A DNA stretch of 64,000 nt from Mobula hypostoma (Eukaryota): assembly GCF_963921235.1 (NCBI RefSeq), contig NC_086115.1, positions 39,370,001 through 39,434,000 on the forward strand. The letters are read 5' to 3'. Under the pieces are notes generated by a model. It did not search any database. It was given only the letters and a program-made list of their open reading frames with translations, and was not told where the DNA came from. Position numbers and translations under genes: made by a program. Each line of letters begins with the position of its first letter. Position 1 is the first letter of the stretch. Positions 16,640-58,220 of the stretch are shown here, in pieces.

Positions 16640-18010
16640 CAGGTTTCCCCCGCTATCCGAAGGTAGACTGTTTCAATGAAATGGTTCTTAAGCCGGAATG
16701 TCGTAAAGTGAATAAGCAATTACCATTTATTAATATGGGAAAATTTTTGTACGTTCCCGGCAGCATCTGTAGGAAGAGGTGCAGTCGACGTTTCAGGCCG
16801 AGACCCTTCGTCAGGACTCACTGTACATGCATTATTTCTACTTTATATAGGCTGTGTATTTTTATATGTTATTTGGTGTGATTTGGCAGCTTCATAGCTT
16901 AAAGGTTACCAGAGAGAGTGTTTCTGCTGAGAGCACTTCCGCCAAGAGTGCTGCCGTGAGATTTTCGCTGCTCTAGACAGTGCTGCAGAAAAATATTTCT
17001 ACTTTATATAGGCTGTGTATTTGTCATATCATTCCTGCTTTTACTATATGTAACTATTATTTTAGTTTTTATGTATTATTTGGCATGATTTTGTAGGATA
17101 TTTTTTGGGTCTTTGGCCTGCTGCGTTCACCAGCAACTTTGATGTGTGTTGCATGTACAGTGTAGTTTCACTTATCGGAATCGGGAAGACTCCAATAAGT
17201 TGCAGTTTTGTCACAGTTAAACACTTGCGTATACGAATAACCACCTTCTGTAATTATTTTCTTCAGTTCTGCTGGGAACTTTTTGACAGCTTCAGTATCA
17301 GCTGAAGCACTGTCTCCGGTAAACGTTAAACTATGAAGCTGTCCTCGCCTCAGAAACCGATCAAACCACCCATGACTACCTTTAAATTCCACTTTTGCAA
17401 CACTTTCGTCACCATCATCCAGTGCTTTCTGTTTCAGCTTATAAAAAAGACTGACTGATTTCTCCTTAAGTAGAAGAAAACTTAACGGAACACCATGCTT
17501 TGTACACCCATCAATCTACTTAAGCAATAGACTTTCCATTTTATCCATTACTGGATGCTGACTAAGAGAGACCCCTTTGCTACGAGCAAAACCAATAGTA
17601 ACATCGGCAGCTTTCAAAATTCTTTCTCTCTGCGTATAAATAGTGCGAATGGTGGACGCAGACAAGTTCAACGCACGGACAACGTCCTTACTTCGTTCAC
17701 CATGATCGAAACGCTTAATTATGTCTAATTTTATGCTAAATGTAACACCCTTACAAGCTCTTTTAGGCTTTTCATATACCTTAGAACTCACCTTGCTAAC
17801 GGATGCACAAAATAAATCGAGATAAAGCACGTGTTTAAGCAGTGGTGGCTAGAATGCAGTTCTGGGAGAGGAGCTTGGCTGTTCGGGCGTGCGCTGCCTT
17901 TTTTCATAACAGTGAAAGCACCTTCTGTTAGCCAAAACAGGTAACTAATGTAGGTCTTTCGTAACAGCGAGGTGTCGTAAAGCGAACGTTCGGAAAACGG
18001 GGGCCACCTG
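16640..18010 (-). mobile_element. Internally deleted Tigger/pogo-like DNA transposon
   Basis: TA TSD (16638-16639, 18011-18012); ~22-bp TIRs CAGGTTTCCCCCGCTATCCGAA / TTCGGAAAACGGGGGCCACCTG; HTH KLDIIKRFDHGE and CENP-B-like FKGSHGWFDRF...QVFNCDKT. Confidence 0.93.
16783..16818 (-). ncRNA. Minimal type I hammerhead ribozyme motif, near-intact
   Basis: Minus strand AGUC-CUGACGA-A-GGGU-CUCG-GCCU-GAAAC-GUC-GACU: full catalytic core, stem I, stem II with a G.U at 10.1/11.1, palindromic ACGU stem III. Confidence 0.75.
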
Positions 18011-19982
18011 TATTCAAGAATGGAACAAAATGGGAGAGATGAAACTCGGAGGTTTTCTGACATTGTTTCGTATGCCTTGGTGGAGGAAACAGAGAATAGG
18101 GGAGATGTCAACCTTCAAACACATCTGGAAAAACATTGTCAAAGCTCCATGCATGAGGAACTCCACAGAGATTCACACTTTAAAATGTGTTTGCATGTCT
18201 CATTATCATCATTGTAATATCCTGTTTGTTTAGTAAATGAACATCTGCTCATGGGACTTTCAAGATTTACTAGAAATGGCTGAACTGGAATGGTACTGTG
18301 CAGCTGTGCCTCTGAATGGGAAGTGCCTATTGTGTCCAACACTTCAGGAAATCATTCCACAGCTTTACAAGCTTAGCGTTAAGCCATATTACAGCAGGGA
18401 TCAGAGGGGCCAGGTTTTCTGATGCCAGGTTCTAAGTGAAGCACTGGGAGGAAATGATTAAGGAGGGTAATGGAAGGAGCAAAGCACTCAGGGCCTGAAT
18501 TGCAGAGCTGGGAGTATAAAATAAGATCCTGACATGTGGTCAAGGTCAGTGAATACATTAGAAAATCCAGAACAAATACACCAGAGTGCTCACACTCAGC
18601 ACTGTGATATACATCTCTATCAGCCACTTAACAATGATCTCTATCAATCAGGATTCCCACTTAACATCATACAGCCTGCAGAAGATGGCATCTCCAACAC
18701 ACATTGCTCCAACATCTCACAGTTTACACTCATCCCTTGCTTTTTCAGGCATCGCACATGTCACACAAACAAACTCATTTACACCCTTCCCTTCCCCTGG
18801 AGGAAATGGTGTCACAAAATCCGTGCCAGCAACAGCATACTGGCAGCAGATGAAACTGTGTCCATAAGCCCAGCAGCCAGGAGGAGAGTGGGCTGGTTGT
18901 TGTTGGAGCAGCCATGACGGAACCAGTGGTTCGAATTGGTGATGACAAGCTGACATCTAATGCTTCTCACATCCCGCTTCCATCTCCTTACACAATTGTT
19001 CTGAGTGATAAAATGCAAATGATGGATGTATGCTCTGTTGTGTTGGATGGTGAGGGATAGCGCAGAGACACCTGGATACCAGCCCTGCAGGATATTCAAC
19101 TGAACCTTATTGATAACCACGCTAGTTCATTGTGTGAACTCCTCCTATGTGGGAGTGGCTAAATGAATGACATTGAAATAACCTCTTAGTTACCACAGCA
19201 CTCTCCATCTCCCTTCATGATTATCATACCTTTCTATCCTTTTTTTCCCCCCGATACCCAACAATTTCCAACTGGCTAGGAAACAAGAAAGCAGCTCCTT
19301 TCTCAATCTATTGGTCACACCCACCAGCACAGAGACAGACACTTTGTGTAGTGGAGATTCATGGAGTCACTCAGCACACGGACAGCTCCTTCTCACCGTG
19401 CCCATGGTGATCATCAAATACGATTTCACCAGCATACGGTCTGTAGCCCTCCACACTTGGGTGATTCAGATGCTCAAAAGGAGTACCTGTTGCAAAGGTC
19501 TTTAGCTTCAGCCTAATAAGGCATGAAAAAATTCATTGTCCATGTCACCTTAACAACCACCAGCAATGTTCTCTTCTCTGCATTGAGGCTGCACCTTTGA
19601 TGTTGGTCTCAGTGGTAGGGGAAGATGTGGGCGCATGTGGGCACGAGTGGGGGTGATAATGAGCACTTGCTCCACTGTGAAAATCTGGGAAGTGCCGATG
19701 GTAGAGCTTCCCCCCCAGTTCAGGTTCAATCCTGACTTCAGGTACTTGGCTGTTGTCTGTGAGGAGTTTGCCCATCGTCTCTGATGTTCTCCTATGTAAC
19801 CCAGTACATTCTCGGGGGTTGCCCCCAGCACCTCCATTGGTGTGTTGGTTGTTTCGATATACATGTGATAAATATATCTGAGTTTGTCAGAGAAGCTTTT
19901 GTGATGCTCTCAGTCCAGCACAACAAACTGAGCTGACTTTTCGTTGTATTACAGACATTGACACTATCTCCATCAGCTATCA

Positions 19983-20226: not shown

Positions 20227-21084
20227 TGTTAACTGGAGCTTGAGTTCCTTGGCATGATCTTTTTATGTATTTTTGGCAGCCGCTAGCTGTGCTCAAGCTA
20301 ATGTGCTGAGCAATATAGCAGCTGCGAGATTTATGCCATGCTCATCAGTCACCATATTGGAACTAAACTGGCACCTGGAATGCTACAAAAACATGTGAAT
20401 CGTGCCAAATTTTGCAGATAGCATAATAATAAGTTCTGATTTATATTGCAAAATCCCTTACATTTTGAATTTAATGATGAATGCTTTGTTGTCATTTAAT
20501 GAAGGCTGGTAAAAATAAAACTTCACTGCACTTGATCCACAACTATCCAAATGTTGGCAGCTTGACATGGCATAATTGGACTTTGGCACAGGGGATGATT
20601 AGTTAACCCCTTGCATGTCCTCCATTGTTCAGTGAAGAGGACGATGTTGCTTGACTTTACATTAATGTTTTTATCCATGGTAAGAGCTTCTAGTGTCATA
20701 GAATATCAAATGTGCCAATAACATGGACATAGAACATGGGACTGTGCAGCATAAGAAAGGCCCTTTGCTCTGCAATGTTGTACTGAACTAAGTAAACTGA
20801 TAAATTCCTAGCCAAACTAAATTCTCATGCCTACACAATGTCCATATCCTTCCATTCGCTGCCATTCTTTTCTTTCTTGATTTTGTTGCTCTCTGGAGGA
20901 GAAGAATTTCAGAGTTGTATACTTTGATAATAAATGAACCTTTGAATCTTCCTTGCCTCTCTCAGTAACTTAAGCTATATCCCATTGGGCCCTGAGGACT
21001 TATCCACCTTAATATTCTTTTAGAGACCCAACTACTTCATACCTCTTTCTTTATCTCAAAATGCCCAAACACATTAGCACAATC

Positions 21085-21345
21085 CACACAAAATGCTGGA
21101 GGAACACAGTGGGCCAGGCTGCATTCATGGAAAAGAATAAACAGTCGATATTTCAGGCTGAGATCCTTCATCAGAGCTGGAAAGGAAGAGGTGAAGTCAG
21201 ATTTTGATGCTTAGGTACCAGCTGTGAGTTTACTTCAGCCATGACTCATGCTTCCCACGACCTCCCTCGCATCCTCCACCTCCAAGCACATGTTTCTTCC
21301 TTTATCCTTTAGGGCTCCTTTATTCTTGAGTGGTGCAACCCACTC
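21085..21345. mobile_element. Penelope pseudo-LTR fragment (minus strand, degenerate hammerhead) plus internal fragment
   Basis: aatgctggaggaacac..cagtcgatatttcaggctgagatccttcatcag. Confidence 0.6.
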
Positions 21346-21935: not shown

Positions 21936-23098
21936 CCCATTTGATTTTAGCTTCCTAAACCTTATATTGTATATGCTTCATTTTACTTCTAGACTAAATT
22001 CATCACCCCTCCCAGCATATAAGGTTCTCTTAACTTGCCATCCTTGTCTTTCCTACTGACTGGAACATACTTGTTCTGTACTCTGTGCAGTTGGTCTTTA
22101 AGTATCCTTCGCATGTCAGATGAGGACTTGCCCAAAAATAGCTGTTACCAATTAACTCTTCTAGTAATTGCCTAATACTCTTGTAATTTGTCTTGCTTTA
22201 ATTATATACTCTCCTACAAAATAATTCTTACCTATTGTCTTAAAACTTAATGCGTGCATGTATGTTCTTGCCGTAGACCTAAATGCTATAAACACCAACT
22301 GGCTGTCAAATGGCTTTGGCAGTTTAACAGCCAAATTGGTCAGGCACGCATTGCCAACAAAGTACAGGGAGGCCACGAGATGCCTGTGGTTGGAAGGGTA
22401 ATGCTCAATGAGGGCTCTGAACAAAGTGCTTTCCTTCCTCATTGCACCTTCAATCCCTTTTGCCACTTCCAACATTCCCACCAACCCAAGTGGGTTTTAT
22501 TCCCCCCATACCTAATGGCTGCTGTTTTCATTGCCTTTCACTGGCTCCATACTGGAGAAAACGTTGAGCAAGGATGTCCCAGGTGCCAGGCTGCATTGTT
22601 TTGCCTACCTATAGTGAGGGCAAAGCACCAAAGACATTAGGTAATTCAGGAAGTCTTTGCCTCACCCAATTACATGCAAGGTGGATATTTGTCTCTGTTT
22701 ATGGCATTCTGAAGTTTGTTGATCGGTATTCTGGACAAGAATGTTTGCTACGGCCCAAGTGCTGAGACAGAAAGAGAGAGAGATGCTGAAGTTGATCAAC
22801 AGTTCACTGACTTTTAACAGGAACTGTGAAGAAAAAGAGGAAAAAACAATTAACACTAGGCCAACAGGGCCATTAATCACAACTTTCAAACTAAAGCCAA
22901 AACTGATACTGCAACTTGGCAGTAGTAGCTTAATACTAAACAACTACTGCTCCTTAACATCGTCAGTTTGAACTCTAGTCTTCTTCTGCCAGAACCAGGA
23001 CAACAGTAAGCAGGGAGTGTTGATATTGCTGTGCCTTTGGTCAAGTCTTAACAAGACTGGAACAAGAGGGAGTTAAAAACCACCATGGTGAAACACTA

Positions 23099-23311
23099 GC
23101 AACACACATCAAAGTTGCTGGTGAACGCAGCAGGTCTGGCAGCATCTCTAGGAAGAGGTACAGTCGATGTTTCGGGCCGAGACCCTTCGTCAGGTCTCAT
23201 CCCGAAACGTCGACTGTACCTCTTCCTAGGGATGCTGCCTGGCCTGCTGTGTTCACCAGCAACTTTGATGTGTGTTGCTTGAATTTCCAGCATCTGCAGA
23301 ATTCCTCGTGT
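23099..23311. mobile_element. 213-bp head-to-head Penelope pseudo-LTR dimer (palindromic insertion)
   Basis: 14-bp TSD atggtgaaacacta (23085-23098, 23312-23325); ~80-95 bp self-complementary arms meeting inside the hammerhead. Confidence 0.9.
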
Positions 23312-23325
23312 ATGGTGAAACACTA

Positions 23326-26300: not shown

Positions 26301-27340
26301 TGAAGACCTCAAGAAGATTTGCATATTCAGCCAGAATGCCAGACAGGTCCATCCTAGCAGTTGACACAGAAGGGGATTTGCGGATAAGGGCTTGAGCTGG
26401 ACCCAGATGGGTAGACAGGCGTCTAGTTCCCACTCTTGCAATGCATTTAGGGACCAGTCAGTCAATGTGTTGTGTTGAGATAACTAGAGAAGGTCAAGCA
26501 TCTGCAGCAGTTCAGGCAAATCAACCAGATAGAAGGAGACAACGAAGGGTCTCGGCCTGAAACATCGACTATACCTCTTCTTAGAGATGCTGCCTGGCCT
26601 GCTTCGTTCACCAGCAACTTTGATGTGTGTTGCAGATAGAAGGAGAGATGTACTCTATGGTTGCCTTATAGCAAAGTTGAGTATATTCTGTGGAAAGTTG
26701 GTTCTGAGAGGCTGACCATCCAGGGCCTCAATTGCTGAGTTGGAACTTTCTATTTCTGAGTTCGAGAGATATCCATGAGGTTCCCAGCTGCCCTGGAGTC
26801 AATAAATGCCTGAAGCTCATGGGTCTAAGATCCCCATGACAAGAAAAATTCTGTCAGAACTCCCCTTCCTGCAGACAGGCATCCTCTTTTACTGGATGTA
26901 TGGGACATGAAGACCAGAGGTGTCATGGATCACCACAACAGAGGCAGGAATCTGTTCTCCTGTTCCGATCTGAGATAAGTACATGTACCCTACCTGTATC
27001 GACTGTGTGATGCGGGAGAGGATACAGAAAAATGGTAATCTAAGGAGTAGGTAGCTCAGGGCATCCTTTCTCGGCGCCTCTCAGTTGTCTGGTTATCAAT
27101 TCAAGTGGCCAAATTAATCAGGTCATACAGGCTGTCCTACTCTTCTTGTACCGCAATCTCAAACCGAATCTCTGCGCTCAGTGTCCGCTGGAAAACAATG
27201 ATGAGGCATCTTTCATTCCACCTCATCTCCACTGTGAGCTTGCGGATTTAACTGCATAGTCCCTCACTGTCCCTCTTCCTTGGTGCAGGTCGAGGAATCA
27301 ATGAGCAATGAGACAATGATCCCTCATCATTGTCTTCCTG
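23326..27340 (-). mobile_element. Decayed Ty3/Gypsy chromovirus (sushi-like): gag, protease, RT, RNase H, partial integrase, chromodomain
   Basis: MEEYIKGTLALGFIYPSTSS..FSKMDLCNAYNLIRI..WKTAFNT (RT); FTQFNFTF..NTKANALS (RNase H end); EKVINKVSYRL..FHVSQL (GPY/F region); YSVQRLL (chromodomain-like). Confidence 0.88.
26540..26632 (+). mobile_element. 93-bp Penelope pseudo-LTR/hammerhead mini-insertion inside the Gypsy
   Basis: 14-bp TSD cagatagaaggaga (26526-26539, 26633-26646); acgaagggtctcggcctgaaacatcgact...gtgtgttg. Confidence 0.88.
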
Positions 27341-35740: not shown

Positions 35741-35761
35741 TTGGTGAGCAAAATTGTAGAG

Positions 35762-36829: not shown

Positions 36830-37057
<228 letters not shown>

Positions 37058-38804: not shown

Positions 38805-39935
38805 TGTCAGGGTCATCAGTGAACTCAAGTGCAGGAATCACAGAGACTTCAGCAATTCAAACAAAACAATGATTTATTACAGAAATTAACTACAGAACTA
38901 ACAAGAAATCAGGCAAGCCGTACAGAATCTTGATGAACTGGAATCACTCACAATGGACAGAAGAACTCTGTCAGAGTTTCATCAGGCAAGGATCCACAAT
39001 GACTGAACAAAGAGGGCTTGGCTTGCTCCCCTGAAATTCACACTGGGGCATGTAGAAATTCAAGACCAATCAGACAGCCCTGGTGTCCAGACGAAGCAAT
39101 AACCCCCAAAGACAACAACTAGAATGCAAGTCATTGAAAATCCCCATGCTAATTAATAACCCCACATTGAACAACAGTTAAAAATACAAAAAAAATCCCC
39201 ATGATACCAAATGAGTCACCTGCAACACAAAAAGATAAATAATTAGACATAAAAGGTAAACAAACGAAGGAACACTACATACCAACAAGGTTACACCAAG
39301 AAAAAACAATCCTCATACTAACTGAAAAAAATTATTATTTCAAAAAAGTGACCCCTGGTTGTGAATTTGAAAACGCAAACACGAGGAAATCTACAGATGC
39401 TGGAATTTCAAGCAACACACACAAAAAATGCTGGTGAACGCAGCAGGCCAGGCAGCATCTATAGGAAGAGGTACAGTCAATGTTTTGGGCCGAGACCTGA
39501 AATGGGTACGAGGCTGGAGAAGGGAGAGGATCATGGGACGGAAGGCCTAGGGAGAAAGAAAGGGATTTTTTTTTCTCTCTCTCCTTTTTCTCCCTCTGTC
39601 CCTCTCACTATACTCCTTGCCCATCCTCTGGGCTTCCCCCCTCCCCCTTTCTTTCTCCCTAGGCCTCCTGTCCCATGATCCTCTCCCTTCTCCAGCCTCG
39701 TATCCCTTTTGCCAATCAACTTTCCAGCTCTTAGCTCCATCCCTCCCCCTCCTGTCTTCTCCTATCATTTTGGATCTCCCCCTCCCCCTCCCACTTTCAA
39801 ATCTCTTACTATCTCTTCTTTCAGTTAGTCCTGACGAAGGGTCCCGGCCCGAAACATTGACTGTACCTCTTCTTATACATGCTGCCCGGCCTGCTGCGTT
39901 CACCAGCATTTTTTGTGTGTTCCCTGGTAGTGACA
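38805..39935 (-). mobile_element. Putative Gypsy-type solo LTR interrupted by a Penelope insertion
   Basis: TGTCA...TGACA termini; AATAAA on the minus strand near the end; flanks cattc / tgttc. Confidence 0.55.
39365..39921. mobile_element. Penelope pseudo-LTR insertion with inverted arms
   Basis: 12-bp TSD ccctggt(t/a)gtga (39353-39364, 39922-39933); plus-strand hammerhead at 39826-39863 with broken stem III (GAAACAUU). Confidence 0.8.
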
Positions 39936-41587
39936 TGTTCTGAGTAGCATCTTGCAATCAGGCTTCCATCCCCTTTTCATCTTTGTCCTGACCCATGAAA
40001 AACATTCTTTTTTTTTCTTTGTTATCCATGGTCTTGCTGTCTGGCTCTGTTATGTATTAGGCTGGAGAAGAACCCACCTGGCATTCTGCCCAAACTAAAC
40101 AGCCTTTCCCATTCTGACAAAGAGTCCTCAAAGTTAATTTTAAACTGTTTTGTTTTTCTCTCTTACTACAGATACTGCTTGGCCTGCTGAGTATTTCTAG
40201 CATTTTTCTTTATGTCATATTTCCAGCCACAGCAGTATTTTGTATCTCACCATTACGGCATTTTTTCTTCTTGTCTCTCCTCTATCTCATTGATCTTCTA
40301 TTTACACCTCCTGAAGACAGCTCAGTGGTGCTTTATATGCACCCACCCACATCTCTCAGCTGCCACCAACATTCCCTCTAATTTTTTTTTAAACAGCTGC
40401 GTGGACCAACAATTGCTCTGAGTTGGAAAATTTTACATGACCTGAAAACTGTGTGGCACTTTAAATAAAACATTATACAGTATAAAAGAAAATTCCAGCT
40501 GAGTAGCAGCAAGGCTATGTGCACAGGAGCATTTCAGTTACTGCGCAGCCATACACCTTCGCAGGTCAGAGGGAGCAGTGGCTGGCACCACCACCATCTG
40601 TGTTCTTCAGTATCCCCTGTTCCCCAGCCTTCGCCCAGATCCCCTTTGTTCTTTCCATTTGCAGACCCTTCTCTGTACCAATAACCATGTCTGATTTCTA
40701 ATTTTACCCACTTCTGATGAAAAGTCATTCACCTGCAACAAAGGTCACTGACTCTGTTTCACTTTCCATAAATTTTAGTGAAATTTCTGAGTATTTTGTA
40801 GATTTTTTTTTACTTCCAGAAGCTGCAGCACTTTGAGATTTACATTCTAACTCATATGATACCTTTTAGTATCTTGCACATTGCGCAAGTGTAGGCACCT
40901 CGAGAAATCCCGGAACAATGATATCAATACAGGAGGTGCAGAGAAATGGCTCACTTCCGTATACTTTGGAATTGACCTTGGCTTTGTACCCAAGTTACCA
41001 CAACTTGAAGTATTAGGTTGACCCAGTGTATGAGTGGCAGAGTTGTGTGTGGTTGGATGTAGCCTAGTTCTCAAGTGACTGTTGGAGTGTTAGAACACAT
41101 AGAGATCAAAGCCTGAACCATGCCCCAGATTGTGTTCTCTTATATTTATTTGAGTTGATTTGAGGGGGCATCTACAGATTCTTTTGAGAGGTCTTATGAT
41201 CTTACACTCCATTTCAGTTACCTCAATGTGATTAGGGGATTTGAGCACCAATTTTTTGAATCAAGAGCATTTGCAGGAATTTAGATCTTGAAATGACACT
41301 TCAATCAGAAACATGCTATAGAAATCTGCACACATTTTTCAAATATTTCACCTCAACACAGAATGAAGCAATTCAGCCCATCAAGTATGTGCTAGCTCTC
41401 AGAGCAACTCCATCAATCCCATTCACTTTATCTTTTTCCTTCACTCTCATACCGATTGTAGTGACTAGTTGAAAAGAAACGAAGTCACAGAGATTGTGAG
41501 GAAGTATGACATGCTTCCAACTAACTGAGTTCCAAGTCGAAAAAGTATGTTTAATCCTTTATTAAAAACCAATAATAAAATCATTCA

Positions 41588-43504
41588 TGTAAACACGAGG
41601 AATTCTGCAGATGCTGGAAATTCAAGCAACACACATCAAAGTTGCTGGTGAACGCAGCAGGCCTGGCATCATCTCTAGGAAGAGGTACAGTCAACGTTTC
41701 GGGCCGAGACCCTTCGTCAGGACTAACTGAAGGAAGAGCTAGTAAGAGATTTGAAGGTGGGAGGGGGAGGGGGAGATCCAAAATGATAGAAGAAGACAGG
41801 CGGGGGAGGGATGGAACCAAGAGCTGCACAGTTGATTGGCAAAAGGGATATGAGAGGATCATGGGACAGGAGACCCAGGGAGAAGGAAAAGGGGGAGGAG
41901 GGGAAAAAACCCAAGGGTGGGCAAGGGGTATAGTCAGAGGGACAGAGGGAGAAAAAGGAGAGAGAGAGAAAGAATGTGTGTATATAAATAAATAACGGAT
42001 GGGGTACGAGGGGGAGGTGGGGCATTAGCGGAAGTTAGAGAAGTCAATGTTCATGCCATCAGGTTGGAGGCTACCCAGATAGAGTACAAGGTGTTGTTCC
42101 TCCAACCTGAGTGTGGCTTCATCTTTACAGTAGAGGAGGCCGTGGATAGACGTATCAGAATGGGAATGGGATGTGGAATTAAAATGTATGGCCACTGGGA
42201 GATCCTGCTTTCTCTGGCGGACAGAGCATAGGTGTTCAGCAAACTGATCTCCCAGTCTGCGTCGGGTCTCGCCAATATATAGAAGGCCACATCGGGAGCA
42301 CCGGATGCAGTATATCACCCCAGCCAACTCACAGGTGAAGTGTCGCCTCACCTGGAAGGACTGTCTGGGGCCCTGAATGGTGGTAAGGGAGGAAGTGTAA
42401 GGGCATGTGTAGCACTTGTTCCACTTACAAGGATAAGTGCCAGGAGGGAGATCAGTGGGGAGGGATGGGGGGGAGGAATGGACAAGGGAGTCACGTAGGG
42501 AGCGATCCCTGCGGAAAGCAGAGGGGGGGGAGGGAAAGATGTGCTTAGTGGTGGGATCCTGTTGGAGGTGGCGGAAGTTACGGAGAATAATACGTTGGAC
42601 CCGGAGGCAGGTGGGGTGGTAGGTGAGGACCAGGGGAACCCTATTCCTAGTGGGGTGGCGGGAGGATGGAGTGAGAGCAGATGTGTGTGAAATAGGGGTG
42701 ATGCATTTTTTAGAGCAGAGTTGATGGAGGAAGGGAAGCCCCTTTCTTTAAAAAAGGAGGACATCTCCCTCGTCCTGGAATGAAAAGTCTCATCCTGAGA
42801 GCAGATGCGGCGGAGATGGAGGAATTGCGAGAAGGGGATGGCATTCTCACCCTGTCTCTTGCAAAAATGCCAGAGACTGGGAGATTGTTTTGCTGAACAC
42901 CTATGCTCTGTCCACCCGAGAAAGCAGGATCTCCCAGCGGCCACACATTTTAATTCCACATCCCATTCACATTCAGATATGTCTATCCACGGCCTCCTCT
43001 ACTGTAAAGATGAAGCCGCACTCAGGTTGGAGGAACAACACCTTATATTCCGTCTGGGTAGCCTCCAACCTGATGGCATGAACATTGACTTCTCTAACTT
43101 CCGCTAATGCCCCACCTCCCCCTCGTACTCCATCCGTTATTTATTTATATACACACATTCTTTCTCTCTCTCTCCTTTTTCTCCCTCTGTCCCTCTGACT
43201 ATACCCCTTGCCCATCCTCTGGATTTTCCCCCCTCCCCCTTTTCCTTCTCCCTGGGCCTCCTGTCCCAAGATCCTCTCATATCCCTTTTGCCAATCACCT
43301 GTGCAGCTCTTGGCTCCATCCCTCCCCCTCCTGTCTTCTTCTATCATTTTGGATCTCCCCCTCCCCCTCCCACTTTCAAATCTCTTACTAGCTCTTCCTT
43401 CAGTTAGTCCCGATGAAGAGTCTCGGCCTGAAACGTCGATTGTACCTCTTCCTACAGATGCTGCCTGGCCTGCTGCGTTCACCAGCAACTTTGACGTGTG
43501 TTGC
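41588..43504 (-). mobile_element. 1.9-kb 5'-truncated Penelope-like retroelement (RT C-terminus, GIY-YIG endonuclease, pseudo-LTR) with an inverted duplication
   Basis: GVIYCIRCSRCGLLYIGET (ORF 42025-42351); IPFSQFLHLRRICS; 14-bp TSD aataaaatcattca (41574-41587, 43505-43518); arms ~41588-42262 and ~42875-43504. Confidence 0.93.
41688..41725 (-). ncRNA. Minimal type I hammerhead ribozyme motif, intact
   Basis: Minus strand UAGUC-CUGACGA-A-GGGU-CUCG-GCCC-GAAAC-GUU-GACUG; all core nucleotides, stems I and II, palindromic ACGU stem III. Confidence 0.82.
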
Positions 43505-44089
43505 AATAAAATCATTCAACTCTTCCGTAATTCATGTGAAACAAAAACGAGCAAGATGAATGTAATTGGATCAAATTCAAACAAAAACAAGCAGTCAACA
43601 AAAAATATGAACTCCTTACTCTATAAATATAGGTGACTATATTCATTTATTTCTACTGCCACCCAAACCCATGTGTCAAACCCTCTTGACCAATTACCCA
43701 GAGCAAGAATAGGCAACACAAATACAATACAATGAATAGATACATGGCTCCGACATCCATCAACAACACCCTTCCTCACTTACCACTCTCCTATAGGAGG
43801 AGTAATTTATAGTAACAGATTGATCTACTAATCAACACATGCTGGAGGAACTCAATGGGTTAGGCAGGATAAGTGAAGGGAAATGGACAGTCGACTTTTT
43901 AAGTCAGGAGCCTTCATCCAGACAAATGTCTTTGCCTGACTTGCTGAGTTCTGCCATTATTTATTTTGTCGCTGCACATTCTGTTATCTGCTGTCTCTTG
44001 TGTCTCCAAACTACCAATCAAAATGACTTTAGGAAGTGGGAAGTCACTGGACCTGGTGGGGATCTACATGACCAGAGAGAGAGCATCTA

Positions 44090-44182: not shown

Positions 44183-44644
44183 TTAATATGCTTTAGTAGT
44201 CATGAGAAGATGTGGGTGGCAGCAGTGTGGACTCATACTGCTTCCAGCTTCAAGAATGTTGCAGACTGGAAATTAAGCAGGAAACTCTCATGCAACCTCA
44301 ATACCAGGTGGAATCTGATTAAGCCATGATTAACACAGTCCATGACTTAAGGATTTCTAGGGTCTTTGATTGTAAGGGGTGTTAAAACAATTATTGCAAA
44401 TTTATATGTGCCCGGAGACTGGATCAATAACATTCTTTAGTTTAAACCTTGTGGCTGAGGTACAATGTTACTTGGCCATAAATAATATTGGAAGCCTTTT
44501 GGCCTTGACACCATTACCTGATGCATGAAAAAACACTATCATTTTCCTGCAGGCCAGATTATATTGCCTGCACACAATGCTGCTCTAAAGCTTGAAAACA
44601 GGCTGGAGAAACTATGATTTACTGAAATGGGTCTATCTCAGATT

Positions 44645-47600
44645 AGCACACACAAAATACTGGATGGATTCAACAGGTCAGGCAGCATCTATGGAGGAGA
44701 ATAAACAGGTTCAGGAAGAGACCCTTCATCAGGACTGGAAAGGAAGGGGAAAGAAGCCAACAAAAGAAGGTGGGGGTAGGGGAAGGAGTGCCAGCTAGAA
44801 GGTAATAGGTGAAGCCAGGTGGGTGGGAAAGGAGGATGAAGTAAAATGCTGGGAAATGATAGGAGGAAAAGGTAAAGGGCTGCAGAAGAAGGCATCTGTT
44901 AGGAGGGGAGAGTAGGCCATGGGCAAGAGGGAAGGAGGAGAGCAACATGGGTAGGTGATAGGCAGGTGAGGAGAATGGGTAAGAAACTAGAGTGGAGAAA
45001 TGAAAAGGAGGGAAGGGGAATTAATTACTGTAAATTGGAGAAATTGAAGTTCATACCATCAGATTGGAGGCTACCCAGATGGAATATGAGGTGTTGCTCC
45101 TCCCACCTCATCAAAGTTGTAGAGGAGGCTGCGGAACAACGTGTCAGCATTGGAATGGGAATTGGAAATAAAAATGGTTGTCCACTGGGATCTCCTGCTT
45201 TTTGCAGATGGAGCGACGGTGCTGGACAAAGTGGTCCCCCAATCTACAAACCCCATTTCCAGAAAAGTTGGGATATTTTCCAAAATGCAATAAAAACAAA
45301 AATCTGTGATATGTTAATTCACGTGAACCTTTATTTAACTGACAAAAGTACAAAGAAAAGGTTTTCAATAGTTTTACTGATCAACTTAATTGTATTTTGT
45401 AAATATACACAAATTTGGAATTTGATGGCTGCAACACACTCAACAAAAGTTGGGACAGAAGCATGTTTACCATTGTTTTACATCACCTTTCCTTTTAATA
45501 ACACTTTTTAATCGTTTTGGGACTGAGGATACTAATTGTAATAGATTTGCAATTGGAAATTTTGTCCATTCTTGCTTGATATAAGACTTCAGCTGCTCAA
45601 CAGTCCGTGGTCTCCGTTGTCTGGTTCTGCTCTTCATGATTCTCCTCTACATTTTCAATAGGAGATAGATCTGGACTGGCAGCAGGCCAGTCAAGCACAC
45701 GTACTCTGTGTCTACAAAGCCACGCTGTTGTAGCCCGTGCAGAATGTGGTCTGGCATTGTCCTGCTGAAATAAGCATGGACATCCTGGGAAGAGACGTCA
45801 CCTTGATGGCAACATATGTCTCTCTAAAATCCTAATATACGCCTCAGAGTCAATTGTATCTTCACATACATGCTACTCACCCATGCCGTGGGCACTGATG
45901 CACCCCCATACCATCACAGATGCTGGCTTTTGCACCTTTCGCTGATGACAATCTGGATGGTCGTTTTCATCTTTGGCACGGAGAACTTGACGCCCGTTTT
46001 TTTCCAAAAACTAGCTGAAATGTGGACTCATCTGACCACAGCACACGGTTCCACAGTCTTTCAGTCCATCTGAGATGAGCTCAGGCCCAGATAACTCCCC
46101 GGCATTTCTGCATTGAATTGATGTATGGCTTCTTCCTTCCGTAATACAGTTTCAAGTTGCATTTCTGGATGCACCGACAGAGTGTGTTGAGTGACAGTGG
46201 TTTTCCGAAGTACTCCCGAACCCAGGTGGCTATAATTGTCACAGTAGCATGACGGTTTTTTAGGCACTGCCGACTGAGGGCTCGAAGATCACGCACATTC
46301 AACAGTGGTTTCCGACCTTGCCCTTTACGCACTGAGACGTCTCTGAATTCTCTGAATCTTTTCACAATATTATGTACTGTAGATGTTGAAAGACCTAAAT
46401 TCTCTGCAATCTTGCATTGAGAAATGTTCCTTTTGAACCAACTAACAATTCTCTCACAAATTTTGGCACAAAGGGGTGAGACACGACCCATCCTTGCTTG
46501 CAAAGACTGAGCCTTTGATGGACTTTTATACCCAGTCATGATACCTCACCTGCTACCAATTAGCCTGCTTAATGTGGAGTCTTCCAAACCGGTGTTACTT
46601 GAATATTCTGTGCACTTTTCAATCTTATTTTAACTCTGTCCCAACTTTTGTTGAGTGTGTTGCAGCCATCAAATTCTAAATTTGTGTATATTTACAAAAT
46701 ACAGTTAAGTTGGTCAGTAAAACTATTGAAAAACTTTTCTTTGTACTTTTGTCAGTTAAATAAAGGTTCACGTGAATTAACATATCACAGATTTTTGTTT
46801 TTATTGCATTTTTCAAAATATCCCAACTTTTCTGGAAATGGGGTTTGTATATTGGGTCTCACCAAATTAGAGGAAGTCCCATCGGGAGCACCGGATACAA
46901 TAGACAACCCAATAAGTTCACAGGTGAAGTGTCGCCTCACAAGGAAGAACTGTTTGGTACCTTGTTTGGAGGTGAGGAGGTGAGTGGGCAGATGTAACTC
47001 TTTTTCCACTCGCAGGGTTATGTGCTAGGAGGAAGATTAGTGGGGAGGGATAAATTGACAAAGGAATCCCTACGGAAAGTAGAGAGTGCAAGGGAGGTAA
47101 AGATGTGTTTGGTGGTAGGGTCCTGTTAAAGATGGCGGAAGTTGCGGCGAATGACGTGCTGGATGTGGAGGCTCATGGGGTGATAGGTGAGGAAAATGAA
47201 ATTCTATCCCTGTTAAGGCGGTGAGAAGATGGGTTGAGGGCAGTTGTTTGTGAAATAGCGGAGATGTGAGTGATAGTAGCATCAATGGTGGAGGAAGGAA
47301 AACCCCAGTCTTTGAAGAAGGAGGACATCTCTGATGCCCTAGAAAGGAAAGCCTCATCCTGGGACCAGATGCGGCAGAGACAAAGGAACTGAGAAAAGTG
47401 AGTGGCATTTTTACAGAAGACAGGATGGAAAGAGGTATAGTCAAGATAGCCATGAGAGTCATTAGGGTTAGAAAAGATGTTAGTCTCCACAGATGGAGAG
47501 AAAAGGTTGAGAAAGGGAAGAGAGGTATCTGCAGTGAACCAAATGATCTTATGGACAGGGCAGAAGTTGTTGATAAAATTGACAAGCTGAGCATGGGTTC

Positions 47601-47703
47601 ACGATGCAGCACCAATACAGTCGTCAATGTAGTGCAGAAATAGTCAGGCAGGATATCCGGGGTAGGCTTGAAACATAGACTTTTCCACGTGGCTAAGAGA
47701 AAA
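44645..47703 (-). mobile_element. Second Penelope subfamily copy (RT from LHYIDD, GIY-YIG, pseudo-LTR) interrupted by a Tc1
   Basis: HYIDDCIG, DSHGYLDYTSFHP, VRRHFTCE; sequence restored across the Tc1 TA site; possible 10-bp TSD atctcagatt (44635-44644, 47704-47713). Confidence 0.85.
45247..46847 (-). mobile_element. Full-length (1601 bp) Tc1/mariner DD34E transposon, IR/DR type, defective
   Basis: TA TSD (45245-45246, 46848-46849); ~210-bp TIRs with AAAAGTTGGGA direct repeats; LGLSTSTVHNIVKRF HTH; WSDES, QQDNARPH and SPDLSPIEN motifs with internal stops. Confidence 0.96.
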
Positions 47704-48002
47704 ATCTCAGATTCTCTCTTCCTCTTGGACTACTTTACTATGCTGATCTTACTAGTGATTGGGCTAAGAATTTCTAAATTTGCAGGAGTAATGAAAAGTT
47801 TCTGGGTTCCTTCCTGAATCCTAACTCCGTACTATACTATTCTTTCTGCCTTTTACTTCAAGTAGGTCTCTTTCTCGAATGATAAGCTAGTTTGGATGTA
47901 AAACAAAAAGATTGGTATCTTCAGCTTTCTGTCTTAAACGTGGTTTAACTGCCAAGATATAGCAATGTATCAAAGCGCTTAACCAAGCTATTTACTTCTT
48001 AG

Positions 48003-48135
48003 GGTTCTTGTACTATGAAGATATCAACCAGGCTGTAAATAAGACAGAGGCAGAAGCTGTGGGCCAAATGATTCAAGACATTACTCGTGAATGCACTTCT
48101 GATGCCCAGGTGACTTTGACAGGGGGATTTAGAAG
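48003..48135 (+). CDS. DNTT: TdT exon 7 (palm N-terminal part), 133 nt: (G)FLYYEDINQAVNKTEAEAVGQMIQDITRECTSDAQVTLTGGFR(R)
   Basis: Acceptor tttacttcttAG, donor AAG|GTGAGT; TGGFRR dNTP-binding motif; phase matches exon 6. Confidence 0.96.
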
Positions 48136-49459
48136 GTGAGTAAATTAGAGAAATTCTAACCTGCTCCAAAATATAATTTCAGCATGTTCTGTTCTAAATG
48201 TTATTTCCTGTTGTAGACAGTCATTTGAGCAAAGAAGGAACACAAAGCTGAATGTCTGTCTAATTTGAAAGGTTGGCGTTGCTCATGTACTTGCTGGTAT
48301 ATCAGTGTTAGCTCGAAATTTTGACAGGTTTTCTCACTTCTCTGTTTTTTTATAATTCAAATTTTTATTATTATTTATTCTTATTTTACAAAGCAGCATA
48401 GCATATCACAAAGCAGATACAGTACAGCATATTTACACAGCCATCCCATGACGGGAAAACAAATAAAACTCAGAGACAGAAAGAAGTTCTAATTTAAGTT
48501 TAAATTAACATACAACCAAAGTTGATCCAACATGTGTTACATGTGTTTTAACTATTTTATTAATTTTGATTCATTCATATTTTTGAAATGTATTATTATG
48601 TGCCTTGCTGGGTTTTTACTTCACTAGATTGCTGCTTTTCACCTTTAGTGTTAGTTGGTAACCTCATTGGCTCTGGGGCATGCAGTTCATGAGCACAGCT
48701 GAACTAGGCATAGGGGAACAGGCGCACAAGTCTCGGGCTGTTCCAGGTGGTGAGCTGTTCCGCCTTTAGTGACCTGGAGCTTGCTCTGAAGTTCCCTGAG
48801 CCCTGGTAATATCCATTAATTACCTGTGATTTTGGGTCAAATCCAAAAGTTTTCCCTGCACTTCCTTTGGATGTAAGATCTTTTGAAGTAAGGTGTGATG
48901 CCTTTCAGTCTTTTATATATGGGCAAGTATGCCAGTTCATATCATTTAAAAAATACTAGTCATATACACAACTAGATTATTTCCAACCTTGGTTTAAAAT
49001 GTAATTATTATTGTACAATTTACAGTGTAAAAGAATTTTACACTTTATACTGTGTAACTGGAAACTATATTCAGATTTTAATAGCATAAACCTCTTGCTG
49101 ATTAAAATCAATATTTAAGTTTATAAAGCTTCAAACATTAAATTATTCTCTTTACTTTTGAACATATGTGGATGTTTTAGGGGTTCACATATTTTTAGTG
49201 TGCCAAGTTTGTCAAGATTGCAGATATAAGCAGACTGCTTCAACGTAAATAATACAACACTTGGATATTGGATCATATTTCTACTTTATAATGCAATAAA
49301 TTATTTAGCAGATTTATGTCAACACTACCATTTGTCCAACATCCAACAGTGATATCGCACATACTGACCAACATTGTTATTAGTATGGTTTATTGAATAT
49401 TTCACTATTAATCATCGATAATACACCATTTCACCTTAATTTACATCTAACAATGAAAG

Positions 49460-55255: not shown

Positions 55256-55319
55256 TATTTTTATGTTTTTATGTGTCTGATAAGCAGCAATTCACAAGAA
55301 AAACAAATTAAACTTAAAT

Positions 55320-55795: not shown

Positions 55796-56904
55796 CGATA
55801 GTAAAATAAATAAAAATAAAGTGACTTGGGAACATTTGGTTGTGCTGGTGGAATTTTTTCAATGTCTGCTCCCAGGCAGGTCAGAATGCTGATCAAAATG
55901 CCTGAAAAATATTCAGCAATTTGTGAAGGAAAGACAAGATTTCAAGCAGTGCATTTTGTCAGAATCCAAGTAACTTGAAGAGGAACATATGGATGATGGT
56001 TTTTCCTAATCGTTAGAAAGAAATCTAATTAATTAGCATAATTAAACCCAGCAGTAAAATGAGAAGTAATTGTTGTTCCTTTTTTCTGGTATACACGTGA
56101 TTTTATTTTTCAGAAGATAACAAATACTGGAGATACTGATCTACCTGTCTGGCTCCTTTTTATTGTCAAATGAGTCAGTTAGCTGAATGATATTCTTAAT
56201 AGACATTAAACATTACAATTCTACACCCCTGTATTATTCATGTTAAGTACCCCAGATGTATGGAAATTGAAAAATAATTTTCCAAGTATTGTGTTACCAA
56301 CAGTAATGAACTTGGAATAAAAGGGGTGTATTAATTCATTGTTATTCCAAAGCAATTTTAGTTTCAAGTCTGTTGGATAAAATGTCTCTATAGGTCATCA
56401 TGGAAACAATAATTACTTCTTGGATTGTCAAGTGTGGTTAACTACTTTCTATTAGAATGCAAAGGGATCCTTTCAGTGGGTGATCGAAAATCCATCATAT
56501 CTGAGCAAGAGATTGTCATGAGGTTGTTTTGCCAATTAGGTTTTTCTGAAATTGCTTGGCTTCAGTCATAACTGACAAATGATCACAACTGTTTCTACAT
56601 TTGTGAAAGTAGATGAACTATCACAATGTGCATCCTTAAGAAGAGAGAAGCTTCAAAAATGAGCAATTTACATTCTTCTTTTGAACAAAGTGTCAACAAA
56701 GTTCTTTAATCAAAAATATAAAGTTTTGGAAAAGATTTAGAAGGAAGCAATGTTTCAGGTTCATCACATTTCATTAGAACGAGAAGCTGTGCTGCTGAGT
56801 ATTTCCAACCGCCCCCCCCCAGTTACTGATTTCTTTTCATATTTCTATGATCAGTAATAATTTATGTTTGAATTGAAGCTTACAGTAATAGTCACAAAAT
56901 ATTC

Positions 56905-58220
56905 CTTCTCCTTCAGCCCTTTAACCTCTGACCTCTCAGCTTCTCACTTTCCCCCTCCCCATCCACCCACCTTCCCCCTCCCCCATCCACCCACCCACTT
57001 TCCCCCTCCCCATCCACCCACCTTCCCCTCCCCATCCACCTACTTTCCCCCTCCCCCATCCACTCACCTTCCCCCTCCCCCACCCACCCACCTTCCCCTC
57101 CCCATCCACCCACCTTCCCCCTCCCCCATCCACCCACTCTCCCCCTCTGCCATCCACCCACCTTCCCCTCCCCATCCACCCACCTTCCCCCTCCCCATCC
57201 ACCCACCCACCTTCCCCCTCCCCCATCCACCCACCTTCCCCCTCCCCATCCACCCACCTTCCCCCTCCCCATCCACTCACCTTCCCCCTCCTCCCATCCA
57301 CCCACCTTCCCCCTCCTCCCATCCACCCACCTTCCCCTCCCCATCCACTGACCTTCCCCCTCCCCATCCACCCACCTTCCCACCTTCCCCACCCCCATCC
57401 GCCCACCCACTTTCCCCCACCCCCATCCACCCACCTTTGCCCTCCCCACCCACCTACCTTTTCCCTCCCCATCCACCTACCTTCCCCCTCCTCCATCCAC
57501 CCACCTTCCCCCCATCGACCCACCTCCCCCCTCCCCCATCGACTCACCTCCCCCTCCCCCATCCACCCACTTTCCCCCTCCCCCATTCACCCACTTTCCC
57601 CCTCCCCATCCACCCACTTTCCCCCTCCCCATCCACCGACCTTCCCCCTCCCCCATCCACTCAATCTCTGCCTCTCCAATCCACCCACCTTCTCCTTCCC
57701 ATCCACTGACCTTCCCCCTCCCCCATCCACCCACCCACTTTCCCCCTCTCCCATCCACCCACTTTCCCCTCCCCCATCCACCTACTTTCCCCCTCCCCCA
57801 TCCACTCACCTTCCCCCTCCCCCATCCACCCACCTTCCCCACTCCCATCCACCCACCTTCCCCCTCCATCCACCCACCTTCCCCCCTCCATCCACCCACC
57901 TTCCTCCTCTCCATCCACCCACCTTCCCCCTCCCCCACCCACCCACCTTGCCCCTCCCCCATCCACCCACCTTCCCCCACCTCCCATCCACCCACTTTCC
58001 CCTCCCCCCATCCATCCAACTTCCCTCTCCCCATCCACCTACTTTCCCCCTCTCCTGGCTTCACCTATCACCTGCCAGCTTGTATTTCTTCCTATCGCCC
58101 CACCTTCTTATTCTGGCCTCTTCCCCATTCCTTTCCGGTCCGATGAAGGGTCTTTACCTGAAATGTTGATTGTTTATCCCTCTCCACAAATGCTGCCTGA
58201 CCTGTCCAGCATTTTGTGTT
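56905..58220 (+). mobile_element. Penelope pseudo-LTR hosting the minisatellite; degenerate hammerhead at ~58135-58172
   Basis: Flanks cagcccttta... and cctggcttcacctatcacc...cctttccggtccgatgaagggtc match the reverse complement of 44720-44890. Confidence 0.7.
56948..58050. repeat. ~1.1-kb C-rich minisatellite, unit ~CCATCCACCCACCTTCCCCCTCC (22-28 nt)
   Basis: Direct inspection; top strand almost without G; it produces the Pro-rich and Gly/Trp-rich pseudo-ORFs in the track. Confidence 0.97.

What the first reader, a model, noticed from the sequence alone, without database searches (positions are those of the whole stretch)
16783..58172. Hammerhead ribozymes throughout TdT introns, with intact copies only on the antisense strand
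About ten copies of a minimal type I hammerhead occur. They have an extra A after A9 (a variant known from a viroid hammerhead) and a palindromic ACGU stem III, which in Penelope elements implies dimeric cleavage. Only 16783-16818 and 41688-41725 keep the full core and stems, and both are on the minus strand. Every plus-strand copy is damaged: ~23200 and 26540 lack CUGA, 39826-39863 has stem III ACAU, 43405-43442 has U4C plus a broken stem II, ~58135 has an altered core, and ~62690 is decayed. Inference: selection against cleavage of the pre-mRNA. The sample is small, several minus-strand copies are also broken, and some lesions are ordinary CpG decay.
Basis: partly seen in the sequence, partly recalled or inferred. 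Interest (0 to 1): 0.75.

Follow-up and report, generated by a model that had tools for sequence, protein, structure and literature searches.

The report
Penelope retrotransposon hammerheads in TdT introns
The small hammerhead ribozyme motifs in these TdT introns are real, but they are the ordinary end pieces of a Penelope-like jumping gene, and finding the two intact ones only on the antisense strand is what chance and the way these elements insert would give.

Summary
The motifs are real. Exact CUGANGA…GAAACGU hammerheads occur only at 16783-16818(-) and 41689-41724(-), with 0.03 expected by chance.

The family is larger than reported: about 16 hammerhead-bearing copies, 7 on plus and 9 on minus, not about ten. 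All are 3'-terminal pieces of a Penelope-like element (PLE). One copy still has a GIY-YIG endonuclease ORF upstream. Copies show variable 5' truncation, 12-14 bp target-site duplications, an optional ~30-nt tail and head-to-head fold-back insertions. These are all published PLE hallmarks.

The selection inference is not supported:
- Intact copies are 2/9 antisense versus 0/7 sense, Fisher p = 0.30 one-sided.
- Several plus/minus copies are the two arms of one insertion.
- Two sense copies (and one antisense arm) lacked CUGA from the time of insertion.
- The ACAU variant at 39827 is shared with its antisense partner arm, so it was inherited.
- The intact 16783 copy was inserted in sense and flipped later.
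- Only 43406-43441 carries a clearly post-insertion core lesion.

Published work reports that such minimal hammerheads are inactive as monomers or need the element's protein.

The scan has already described this family on other DNA of the same genome.

The parts
16783..16818 (-). Intact minimal hammerhead (AGUC CUGACGA A GGGUCUCGGCCU GAAACGU C GACU). It is the 5' end of a short PLE tail copy at 16756-16823.
16756..17114 (.). 359-bp segment inverted after insertion. It carries the hammerhead half of a copy whose other half (17115-17155, +) stayed in sense. The 13-bp target-site duplication TGCATGTACAGTG now forms an inverted pair at 16819-16831 / 17150-17162.
21079..21186 (-). Older-subfamily PLE tail copy. 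Its hammerhead at about 21143-21179 has a complete core (CUGAUGA, GAAA, AUAU palindrome, C17) but weakened stems I and II.
23090..23312 (.). One fold-back PLE insertion flanked by the 14-bp duplication ATGGTGAAACACTA. The minus arm (23090-23197) has a complete core but stem III ACAU. The plus arm (23193-23312) starts inside stem II, so it lacks CUGA, but it keeps GAAACGUC/GACUG and the ~30-nt tail extension.
26542..26633 (+). 5'-truncated PLE tail copy that starts inside the CUGAcGA box. It is flanked by the 13-14 bp duplication (C)AGATAGAAGGAGA, so it lacked the CUGA box from the time of insertion.
39377..39921 (.). One fold-back PLE insertion. The minus arm is 39377-39564 and lacks about 130 nt, including the hammerhead 5' half. 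The centre is 39565-39644. The plus arm is 39645-39921, with a core-complete hammerhead at 39827-39862. Both arms share ACAUU, so that variant predates insertion. Probable 12-bp duplication CCCTGGT(T/A)GTGA.
40112..40206 (+). Old, decayed PLE tail copy (hammerhead remnant at about 40114-40137).
41591..43504 (.). One fold-back PLE insertion flanked by the 14-bp duplication AATAAAATCATTCA. The minus copy (41591-42873) carries the linker and GIY-YIG endonuclease ORFs and the intact hammerhead at 41689-41724. The plus arm (42874-43504) is 94% identical over 633 bp, and its hammerhead at 43406-43441 carries U4C and a stem II G>A change.
42025..42351 (-). GIY-YIG endonuclease remnant of the PLE (VIYCIRCSRCGLLYIGET…R…H…E…N), about 300 nt upstream of the hammerhead.
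   Evidence: ORF; Pfam GIY-YIG, E = 7e-4, 20.3 bits against a cut-off of 22.6; Atlas eukaryotic GIY-YIG clusters, score 0.95
43835..43963 (.). Old fold-back remnant. The minus arm (43835-43923) has a decayed hammerhead. The plus part (43922-43963) is a tail fragment.
44642..47650 (-). Older, longer 5'-truncated PLE copy. Its hammerhead at about 44706-44736 keeps CUGAUGA but has lost GAAACGUC. A Tc1/mariner remnant interrupts the copy at about 45467-46539.
58126..58226 (+). Old PLE tail copy. The hammerhead at 58137-58172 has lost U4, and stem III reads AUGU.
60627..60705 (-). Old, decayed and truncated PLE tail copy.
62376..62810 (.). Two old decayed copies head to head (minus 62376-62474, plus 62679-62810). 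This may be another fold-back insertion.
36830..37057 (+). ORF containing a TdT exon (fingers domain). It defines the sense strand.
   Evidence: DNA_pol_lambd_f, E = 7e-14; mouse TdT E = 4e-14 against Pol mu 1e-8
47963..48136 (+). ORF containing the next TdT exon (FLYYED…TLTGGFRR).
   Evidence: TdT E = 7e-9; matched residues follow on from those of the previous exon

Best explanation
The hammerheads are passengers in dead, mostly 5'-truncated copies of the 3' end of a Penelope-like retrotransposon that inserted repeatedly into the introns of the TdT gene.

The motif lies about 100-130 nt from the element's 3' end and about 300 nt downstream of the GIY-YIG endonuclease ORF. Because the element's copying machinery often stops early and often makes head-to-head fold-back insertions, many events place one copy on each strand, and the truncation point decides which arm keeps a whole hammerhead.

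After insertion the copies decay neutrally. Decay is fast at the five CpGs inside the motif. The two intact copies are simply the survivors among five young copies that were full-length at insertion, and both being antisense is a chance outcome. One of them was originally a sense insertion.

Shown here: the anatomy, the insertion structure, the target-site duplications and the statistics. Inferred: that the copies are neutral and catalytically inert in the host pre-mRNA.
For: - Motif and family.
- Collinearity with a PLE 3' end that carries a GIY-YIG ORF.
- Fold-back pairs with a single target-site duplication.
- Two alternative 3' ends about 30 nt apart (…GTGTGTTGC versus …CCTCGTGT), with only one arm of each pair extended. 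This is the published PLE 'tail' (PMC8557442; PMC11167929).
- Insertion-time truncation of 23193(+) and 26542(+).
- ACAUU shared by both arms at 39377-39921.
- 16783 was inserted in sense and then inverted.
- Strand test: 2/9 versus 0/7, p = 0.30 one-sided. Core-complete copies are 4/9 versus 1/7 (counted, not tested).
- The two arms of 41591-43504 have equal numbers of derived changes, 9 versus 9.
- Literature: a single minimal hammerhead showed no detectable self-cleavage and dimers cleaved only weakly (PMC4209133). The Anolis PLE hammerhead cleaves only with the element's protein, and no RNA-seq read ends were found at the cleavage site (PMC11167929).
Against: - Private substitutions in the hammerhead segment of young copies number 8/128 sites on sense against 2/135 on antisense (Fisher p = 0.055). 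The tails show no difference (6/244 versus 3/212).
- Copy 43406-43441 carries 5-6 derived changes within about 30 nt, while the rest of its arm has 3-4 in about 325 nt.
- This trend comes from that one copy. Without it p = 0.22. It was chosen after seeing the data, and it sits in the CpG-richest part of the element.
Confidence: 0.85

Rival explanations
1. One reading: intact sense-strand hammerheads cut the TdT pre-mRNA and are removed or disabled by selection, so intact copies persist only on the antisense strand.
For: - 0 of 7 sense copies are intact against 2 of 9 antisense.
- Private changes in sense hammerhead segments are in excess (8/128 versus 2/135, p = 0.055).
- Changes cluster in 43406-43441, including the inactivating U4C.
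- The hammerhead-bearing half of the 16783 copy is now on the antisense strand after an inversion.
Against: - The difference is not significant (p = 0.30 one-sided, 0.475 two-sided).
- Two sense 'lesions' are truncations made at insertion, and one (ACAU at 39827) was inherited from the source copy.
- The antisense arm at 23162 lost its palindrome while its sense partner kept it.
- Under the dimer model, sense copies 23193 and 43406 keep cleavable substrate halves, and 39827 keeps a full enzyme half, so the pre-mRNA is not 'protected' (inference).
- Monomeric minimal hammerheads are inactive in vitro, and a vertebrate PLE hammerhead needs the PLE protein.
- Unchecked first-reader notes from other windows of this genome list intact sense intronic copies in at least eight genes.
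Confidence: 0.07
2. The short 93-125-nt copies flanked by target-site duplications form an autonomous-looking 'retrozyme-like' family of hammerhead-headed mini-elements, rather than by-products of PLE copying.
For: Several copies are only the hammerhead plus about 70-100 nt and have clean 13-14 bp duplications (16756-17155, 26542-26633). A 2026 preprint links animal retrozymes to PLE pLTRs.
Against: - The short copies are collinear with, and 87-94% identical to, the 3' end of the endonuclease-encoding copy at 41591-42873.
- Their 5' ends vary: the first retained base lies at positions 12, 12, 19, 25 and 25 of the tail as numbered, where stem I starts at 12 and the cleavage site is at 43.
- There are no tandem hammerhead dimers or multimers in the window.
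- No copy starts at the cleavage site.
Confidence: 0.05
3. The motifs are chance matches to a loose hammerhead descriptor.
For: No Rfam hammerhead model matches, even at E <= 10 in a 101-nt search.
Against: Two exact hits against 0.03 expected. The 32-nt motif recurs with 3 or fewer mismatches against 0 expected. It sits at a fixed position in a repeat family and has every feature published for PLE minimal hammerheads.
Confidence: 0.01

Closest known systems
Minimal hammerheads (min-HHR) of metazoan Penelope-like elements (Cervera & De la Peña 2014, PMC4209133)
   Same: - Type I motif with CUGANGA / GAAA / UH core.
- Unpaired nucleotide between A9 and 10.1.
- G10.1-C11.1 pair.
- No real helix III, only a palindromic 15.2-16.2 (ACGU).
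- Short helix I of 4-5 bp.
- Located in the PLE terminal repeat or 3' end.
- Thousands of mostly solitary truncated copies.
- Pairs 100-700 bp apart on opposite strands.
   Different: Host lineage: a cartilaginous fish according to earlier scan notes, which was not verified here. The family has its own sequence, and its helix II is only 4 bp with a CUCG loop. Self-cleavage is untested.
Poseidon/Neptune-type EN+ PLEs of vertebrates, e.g. PAc of Anolis carolinensis (Frangieh et al. 2024, PMC11167929; Craig et al. 2021, PMC8557442)
   Same: [quoted passage not shown]
   Different: No reverse-transcriptase portion survives in this window, so clade assignment was not attempted.
Conserved intronic hammerheads of amniotes (de la Peña & García-Robles 2010, listed in the references of PMC6765202; details from my own knowledge)
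   Same: Type I hammerheads lying inside introns of protein-coding genes.
   Different: Those are single-copy, sense-oriented, conserved across species and efficient as monomers, with a stable helix III and tertiary loop contacts. The copies here are repeat-borne, on both strands, decaying and without a helix III.
Non-LTR retrozymes of animals (PMC7229834; bioRxiv 10.64898/2026.07.22.740005)
   Same: Type I hammerheads with a palindromic helix III; proposed derivation from PLE pLTRs; relative depletion from introns reported in Xenopus.
   Different: Retrozymes are tandem repeats that give circular RNAs. The copies here are dispersed single or fold-back tails. That preprint did not analyse orientation within introns.
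Antisense orientation bias of intronic L1 and ERV elements in mammals (PMC5717806, PMC1794541, PMC3088655; abstracts seen)
   Same: A strand bias of intronic retroelements attributed to interference with host transcripts.
   Different: Those biases rest on thousands of copies and involve polyadenylation or splice signals, or the insertion mechanism, not ribozyme cleavage. In this window copy number is unbiased (7 plus, 9 minus).

Membership tests
Hammerhead ribozyme, PLE minimal type I variant (Cervera & De la Peña 2014) | Conserved core: C3 U4 G5 A6 N7 G8 A9 … G12 A13 A14 … U16.1 H17 | tested here: met
   Complete in 16783-16818(-), 41689-41724(-), 23162-23197(-), about 21143-21179(-) and 39827-39862(+).
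Hammerhead ribozyme, PLE minimal type I variant (Cervera & De la Peña 2014) | [quoted passage not shown] | tested here: met
   CUGACGA-A-GGGUCUCGGCCC-GAAA. The bulged A is in all copies that keep this part. G-C in 41689, G·U in 16783. The feature is described in PMC4209133.
Hammerhead ribozyme, PLE minimal type I variant (Cervera & De la Peña 2014) | No stable helix III; palindromic 15.1-16.1 segment that allows a dimeric helix III | tested here: met
   ACGU in 16783, 41689, 23193(+) and 43406(+). It has decayed to ACAU, AUGU or AUAU in other copies.
Hammerhead ribozyme, PLE minimal type I variant (Cervera & De la Peña 2014) | Located in the terminal repeat or 3' region of a PLE | tested here: met
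   About 300 nt downstream of a GIY-YIG ORF and 100-130 nt from the element's 3' end in copy 41591-42873.
Hammerhead ribozyme, PLE minimal type I variant (Cervera & De la Peña 2014) | Self-cleavage at H17 (as a dimer or with protein) | not testable with these tools
   No assay was possible and the read-level test was unavailable. MFE folding gives a rod-like alternative fold, not the hammerhead fold, which is uninformative.
Rfam hammerhead families (Hammerhead_1 and relatives) | Match to the covariance model at the gathering score | tested here: not met
   No hammerhead hit at the gathering score, at E <= 10 on the whole window, or at E <= 10 on the 101 nt around the intact copy. My reading is that this is because the motif has no helix III hairpin.
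Penelope-like element (EN+ PLE) | GIY-YIG endonuclease with Cys residues inside the GIY-YIG core, C-terminal to the RT | tested here: inconclusive
   The ORF at 42025-42351(-) reads VIYCIRCSRCGLLYIGET…, followed by R, H, E and N. Pfam GIY-YIG gives E = 7e-4 at 20.3 bits, below the 22.6-bit cut-off. Atlas feature search gives eukaryotic GIY-YIG clusters at 0.95. There is no PDB match.
Penelope-like element (EN+ PLE) | Telomerase-like reverse transcriptase domain | not tested
   All copies in the window are 5'-truncated downstream of the RT. The window was not searched for RT domains.
Penelope-like element (EN+ PLE) | Insertion signature: 5' truncation, adjacent inverted truncated copy, optional 30-40 nt tail at one end, target-site duplication | tested here: met
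   Three clear fold-back insertions, each with a single duplication and a tail extension on one arm only. The signature is described in PMC8557442 and PMC11167929.
Non-LTR retrozyme | Tandem repeats with a hammerhead in each unit | tested here: not met
   No tandem arrays of the unit. TRF finds only an unrelated-looking C-rich minisatellite and a 27-bp repeat. The copies are dispersed or inverted.

The most novel reading that the evidence does not exclude
Across the whole genome, catalytically competent Penelope hammerheads are depleted, or decay faster, on the sense strand of introns than on the antisense strand at equal copy age, because occasional dimeric or protein-assisted cleavage of pre-mRNAs is costly. 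The cluster of changes in the sense copy at 43406-43441 and the inversion of the 16783 copy would then be local traces of that pressure.
Probability: 0.07. Interest if true: 0.6.

Novelty: new member of a known kind. Interest (0 to 1): 0.2.

Why it matters
As it stands, this is one more lineage and family carrying the published minimal hammerheads of Penelope-like elements. It matters little beyond documenting their density in a ray immune-gene locus.

If the strand-selection idea held genome-wide, it would be the first in vivo evidence that these very weak ribozymes cut RNA in cells and impose a cost on host genes. Whether they do is an open question for PLE hammerheads. This window gives no significant support for it.

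Tried and rejected
- **Rfam:** scans at the gathering score, at E <= 10 on the window, and at E <= 10 on the 101 nt around an intact copy gave no hammerhead hit. They gave only spurious plant-miRNA hits on a fold-back hairpin.
- **Folding:** MFE and co-folding of monomers and dimers predict a rod-like alternative pairing, not the catalytic fold. This says nothing about activity.
- **PDB:** a sequence search with the endonuclease ORF found nothing.
- **TdT motifs:** a first regex pass for palm and C-terminal TdT motifs found nothing in the window. A second pass found four exon-bearing ORFs.
- **Exons:** they were searched one by one by reference.
- **Retrozyme-like reading:** I considered that the short copies are an independent retrozyme-like family. 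I rejected it because they are collinear with the endonuclease-encoding copy and have variable 5' ends.
- **Template cleavage:** I considered that copy 5' ends mark hammerhead-cleaved templates. No copy starts at the cleavage site.

Full report
**Observation**

On the minus strand, 16783-16818 reads AGUC-CUGACGA-A-GGGUCUCGGCCU-GAAACGU-C-GACU. On the minus strand, 41689-41724 reads the same except for C11.1 in stem II and U at position 17. The pattern CTGANGA-N8-22-GAAACGT occurs twice in the window against 0.03 expected from shuffles. The 32-nt motif recurs three times with up to 3 mismatches against 0 expected.
- 23193(+) and 26542(+) lack the CUGA box.
- 39827-39862(+) has ACAU.
- 43406-43441(+) has U4C and a G>A change in stem II.
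- 58137-58172(+) has lost U4 and reads AUGU.
- 62685-62722(+) is decayed.

The inventory was incomplete. A profile built from the copies and run with nhmmer finds about 16 hammerhead-bearing copies plus two tail fragments.
- Plus strand, 7 copies: 23193, 26541, 39818, 40112, 43397, 58126, 62679.
- Minus strand, 9 copies: 16826, 21186, 23199, 39497, 41733, 43923, 44744, 60705, 62474.

One is 23162-23197, where only stem III has become ACAU and one stem I pair is lost. The other is about 21143-21179, from an older subfamily, where stem III is AUAU and still palindromic.

**Host gene**

Four plus-strand ORFs carry TdT-like peptides. The ORF at 36830-37057 matches the Pfam DNA polymerase lambda fingers domain at E = 7e-14. 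Its best PDB match is mouse TdT at E = 4e-14, against 1e-8 for Pol mu. The ORF at 47963-48136 matches TdT residues that follow directly on those of the previous exon, at E = 7e-9. I searched the exons one at a time by reference and joined no spliced model. No exon downstream of 48136 was found in the window. That 48137-64000 is intron is therefore an inference.

**What the repeats are**

The copies extend well beyond the hammerhead. All share about 70-100 nt downstream of it, and three share at least 350 nt upstream. The longest copy, 41591-42873 on the minus strand, carries an ORF about 300 nt upstream of the hammerhead that reads …VIYCIRCSRCGLLYIGETRRRLGD.FAEH…EEQHL…GMN. This is a GIY-YIG endonuclease with cysteines inside the core. 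The Pfam match is weak (E = 7e-4, 20.3 bits against a 22.6-bit cut-off). Its nearest Atlas clusters are eukaryotic GIY-YIG proteins of about 105-110 aa, with a score of 0.95.

The insertion anatomy matches what is published for Penelope-like elements: strong 5' truncation, an adjacent inverted 5'-truncated copy, and an optional 30-40 nt tail at one end only (PMC8557442). That tail arises from two reverse-transcription start sites (PMC11167929).

Three loci are single fold-back insertions, each bounded by one target-site duplication:
- 23090-23312, with ATGGTGAAACACTA.
- 41591-43504, with AATAAAATCATTCA and arms of 633 bp at 94% identity.
- 39377-39921, with a probable 12-bp duplication carrying one mismatch.

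In each, one arm ends at …GTGTGTTGC and the other runs about 30 nt further to …CCTCGTGT. 43835-43963 and perhaps 62376-62810 have the same head-to-head geometry.

The hammerhead itself has every feature listed for metazoan PLE minimal hammerheads. [quoted passage not shown] That paper also notes pairs of motifs 100-700 bp apart on opposite strands (PMC4209133). No Rfam hammerhead model matches, even at E <= 10 on 101 nt. I attribute this to the missing helix III hairpin.

**The strand claim**

1. *Raw contrast.* Intact copies are 2 of 9 antisense and 0 of 7 sense. Fisher's test gives p = 0.30 one-sided and 0.475 two-sided. Core-complete copies are 4 of 9 against 1 of 7.
2. *Independence.* The copies are not independent, because fold-back events put one copy on each strand. 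Total copy number is unbiased.
3. *Origin of each sense lesion.*
   - 23193(+) starts inside stem II at the fold-back junction.
   - 26542(+) starts inside the CUGA box and is flanked by a 13-14 bp duplication. Neither copy ever had a complete ribozyme.
   - The ACAUU of 39827(+) is shared with its antisense partner arm at 39474-39497, so it came with the template.
   - The three old sense copies (40114, 58137, 62685) are matched by equally decayed old antisense copies (43888, 44706, 60680, 62440).
   - Only 43406-43441 carries a clearly post-insertion inactivating change.
4. *A counter-example.* In the pair at 23090-23312 the antisense arm lost the ACGU palindrome and the sense arm kept it.
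5. *History of the 16783 copy.* This copy did not insert antisense.
   - Its 13-bp duplication TGCATGTACAGTG lies next to the hammerhead at 16819-16831. It appears again, reverse-complemented relative to that, after the tail at 17150-17162.
   - The tail half (17115-17155) is still in sense.
- The simplest history is a sense insertion followed by inversion of 16756-17114.
In a dimeric hammerhead, one copy supplies the enzyme half and the other supplies the substrate half.
   - Sense copies 23193 and 43406 keep GAAACGUC plus the stem I 3' strand.
   - Sense copy 39827 keeps a full enzyme half.
   - This point is an inference from the published dimer scheme.

Among the eight young copies, private substitutions in the hammerhead segment number 8 in 128 sites on the sense strand against 2 in 135 on the antisense strand (p = 0.055). 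The tails do not differ (6/244 against 3/212). With 39567-39921 as outgroup, the two arms of 41591-43504 have equal derived changes overall (9 and 9). However, 5-6 of the sense arm's nine fall within about 30 nt of the hammerhead, and none of the antisense arm's do.

This is suggestive but weak:
- It rests on one copy. Without it p = 0.22.
- It was noticed before being tested.
- The hammerhead holds five CpGs in 37 nt. Two of the changes are CpG transitions, and a third (position 17) cannot be polarised safely.

**Mechanistic plausibility from the literature**

- A single PLE minimal hammerhead showed no detectable self-cleavage in vitro. Dimers and trimers cleaved weakly, mostly at unphysiological Mg2+ concentrations (PMC4209133; review PMC6765202).
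- For a vertebrate PLE from Anolis, the hammerhead cleaved only when the element's protein was added. No public RNA-seq reads began or ended at the cleavage site (PMC11167929).
- A 2026 preprint reports relative depletion of PLE-derived retrozymes from Xenopus introns but did not analyse orientation.

The strand-specific idea therefore looks unpublished and testable. The prior that solitary intronic copies cut a pre-mRNA is low.

First-stage notes from other windows of this genome list intact sense-oriented intronic copies in HDAC5, ASNSD1, CNOT10, TUSC2, MRTO4, rbfox1l, TMOD1 and KIAA1191. They are unchecked and I could not test them. If they are right, they argue against strong exclusion.

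**Limits**

- No genome-wide count can be made from one window.
- The organism label (a devil ray) comes from earlier notes, not from my own tests.
Copies were only compared with one another.

**Verdict**

The motifs are real and correctly recognised. They belong to a known kind, and the scan has already described the same family on other DNA of this genome. The antisense-only pattern of intact copies is explained by small numbers, insertion-time truncation, fold-back pairing, an inherited variant and a later inversion. Selection against pre-mRNA cleavage is not supported here and remains a low-probability hypothesis that a genome-wide, age-controlled count would settle.

Noticed in passing
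window 56945-58052: A 1.1-kb C-rich minisatellite (24-bp unit CACCTTCCCCCTCCCCCATCCACC, about 46 copies) sits directly upstream of the old sense hammerhead copy at 58137. The unit resembles the C/T-rich PLE 3'UTR stretch that precedes the hammerhead, so it is probably an expansion of it. It also explains the strong negative GC skew in 56-60 kb.
   Followed up: partly
window 39498-39714: The centre of a fold-back PLE insertion forms a long hairpin (arms 39500-39564 / 39645-39709, 94% complementary). It produces spurious sub-threshold Rfam hits to plant miRNA families (MIR1858 at 77 bits against a gathering score of 137).
   Followed up: yes
window 35825-35954: Another ~130-nt near-perfect hairpin gives a sub-threshold match to MIR9563 (63 bits against a gathering score of 90). 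It is probably an inverted-repeat transposon remnant and lies about 900 bp upstream of a TdT exon.
   Followed up: no
window 45467-46539 (-): A Tc1/mariner-type transposase remnant (HTH_23, HTH_Tnp_Tc3_2) is nested inside the older 5'-truncated PLE copy at 44642-47650.
   Followed up: partly
window 16756-17114: A 359-bp inversion has one breakpoint inside a PLE tail copy. The inverted block also holds local direct duplications (29 nt at 100% identity, 16833-16861 / 16994-17022), so the rearrangement was complex.
   Followed up: partly
window 44642-47650 vs exon ORF 47963-48136: An old antisense PLE copy ends roughly 300-350 bp upstream of the ORF that holds the TdT palm-domain exon. No effect on splicing can be judged from sequence alone.
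   Followed up: no
window: 5' ends of PLE copies: Five young copies begin within or at the edge of the hammerhead. Their first retained bases lie at positions 12, 12, 19, 25 and 25 of the tail as numbered (stem I starts at 12, cleavage site at 43). None begins at the cleavage site. This suggests reverse transcription or template switching tends to stop in the structured motif, rather than use of ribozyme-cleaved templates.
   Followed up: partly
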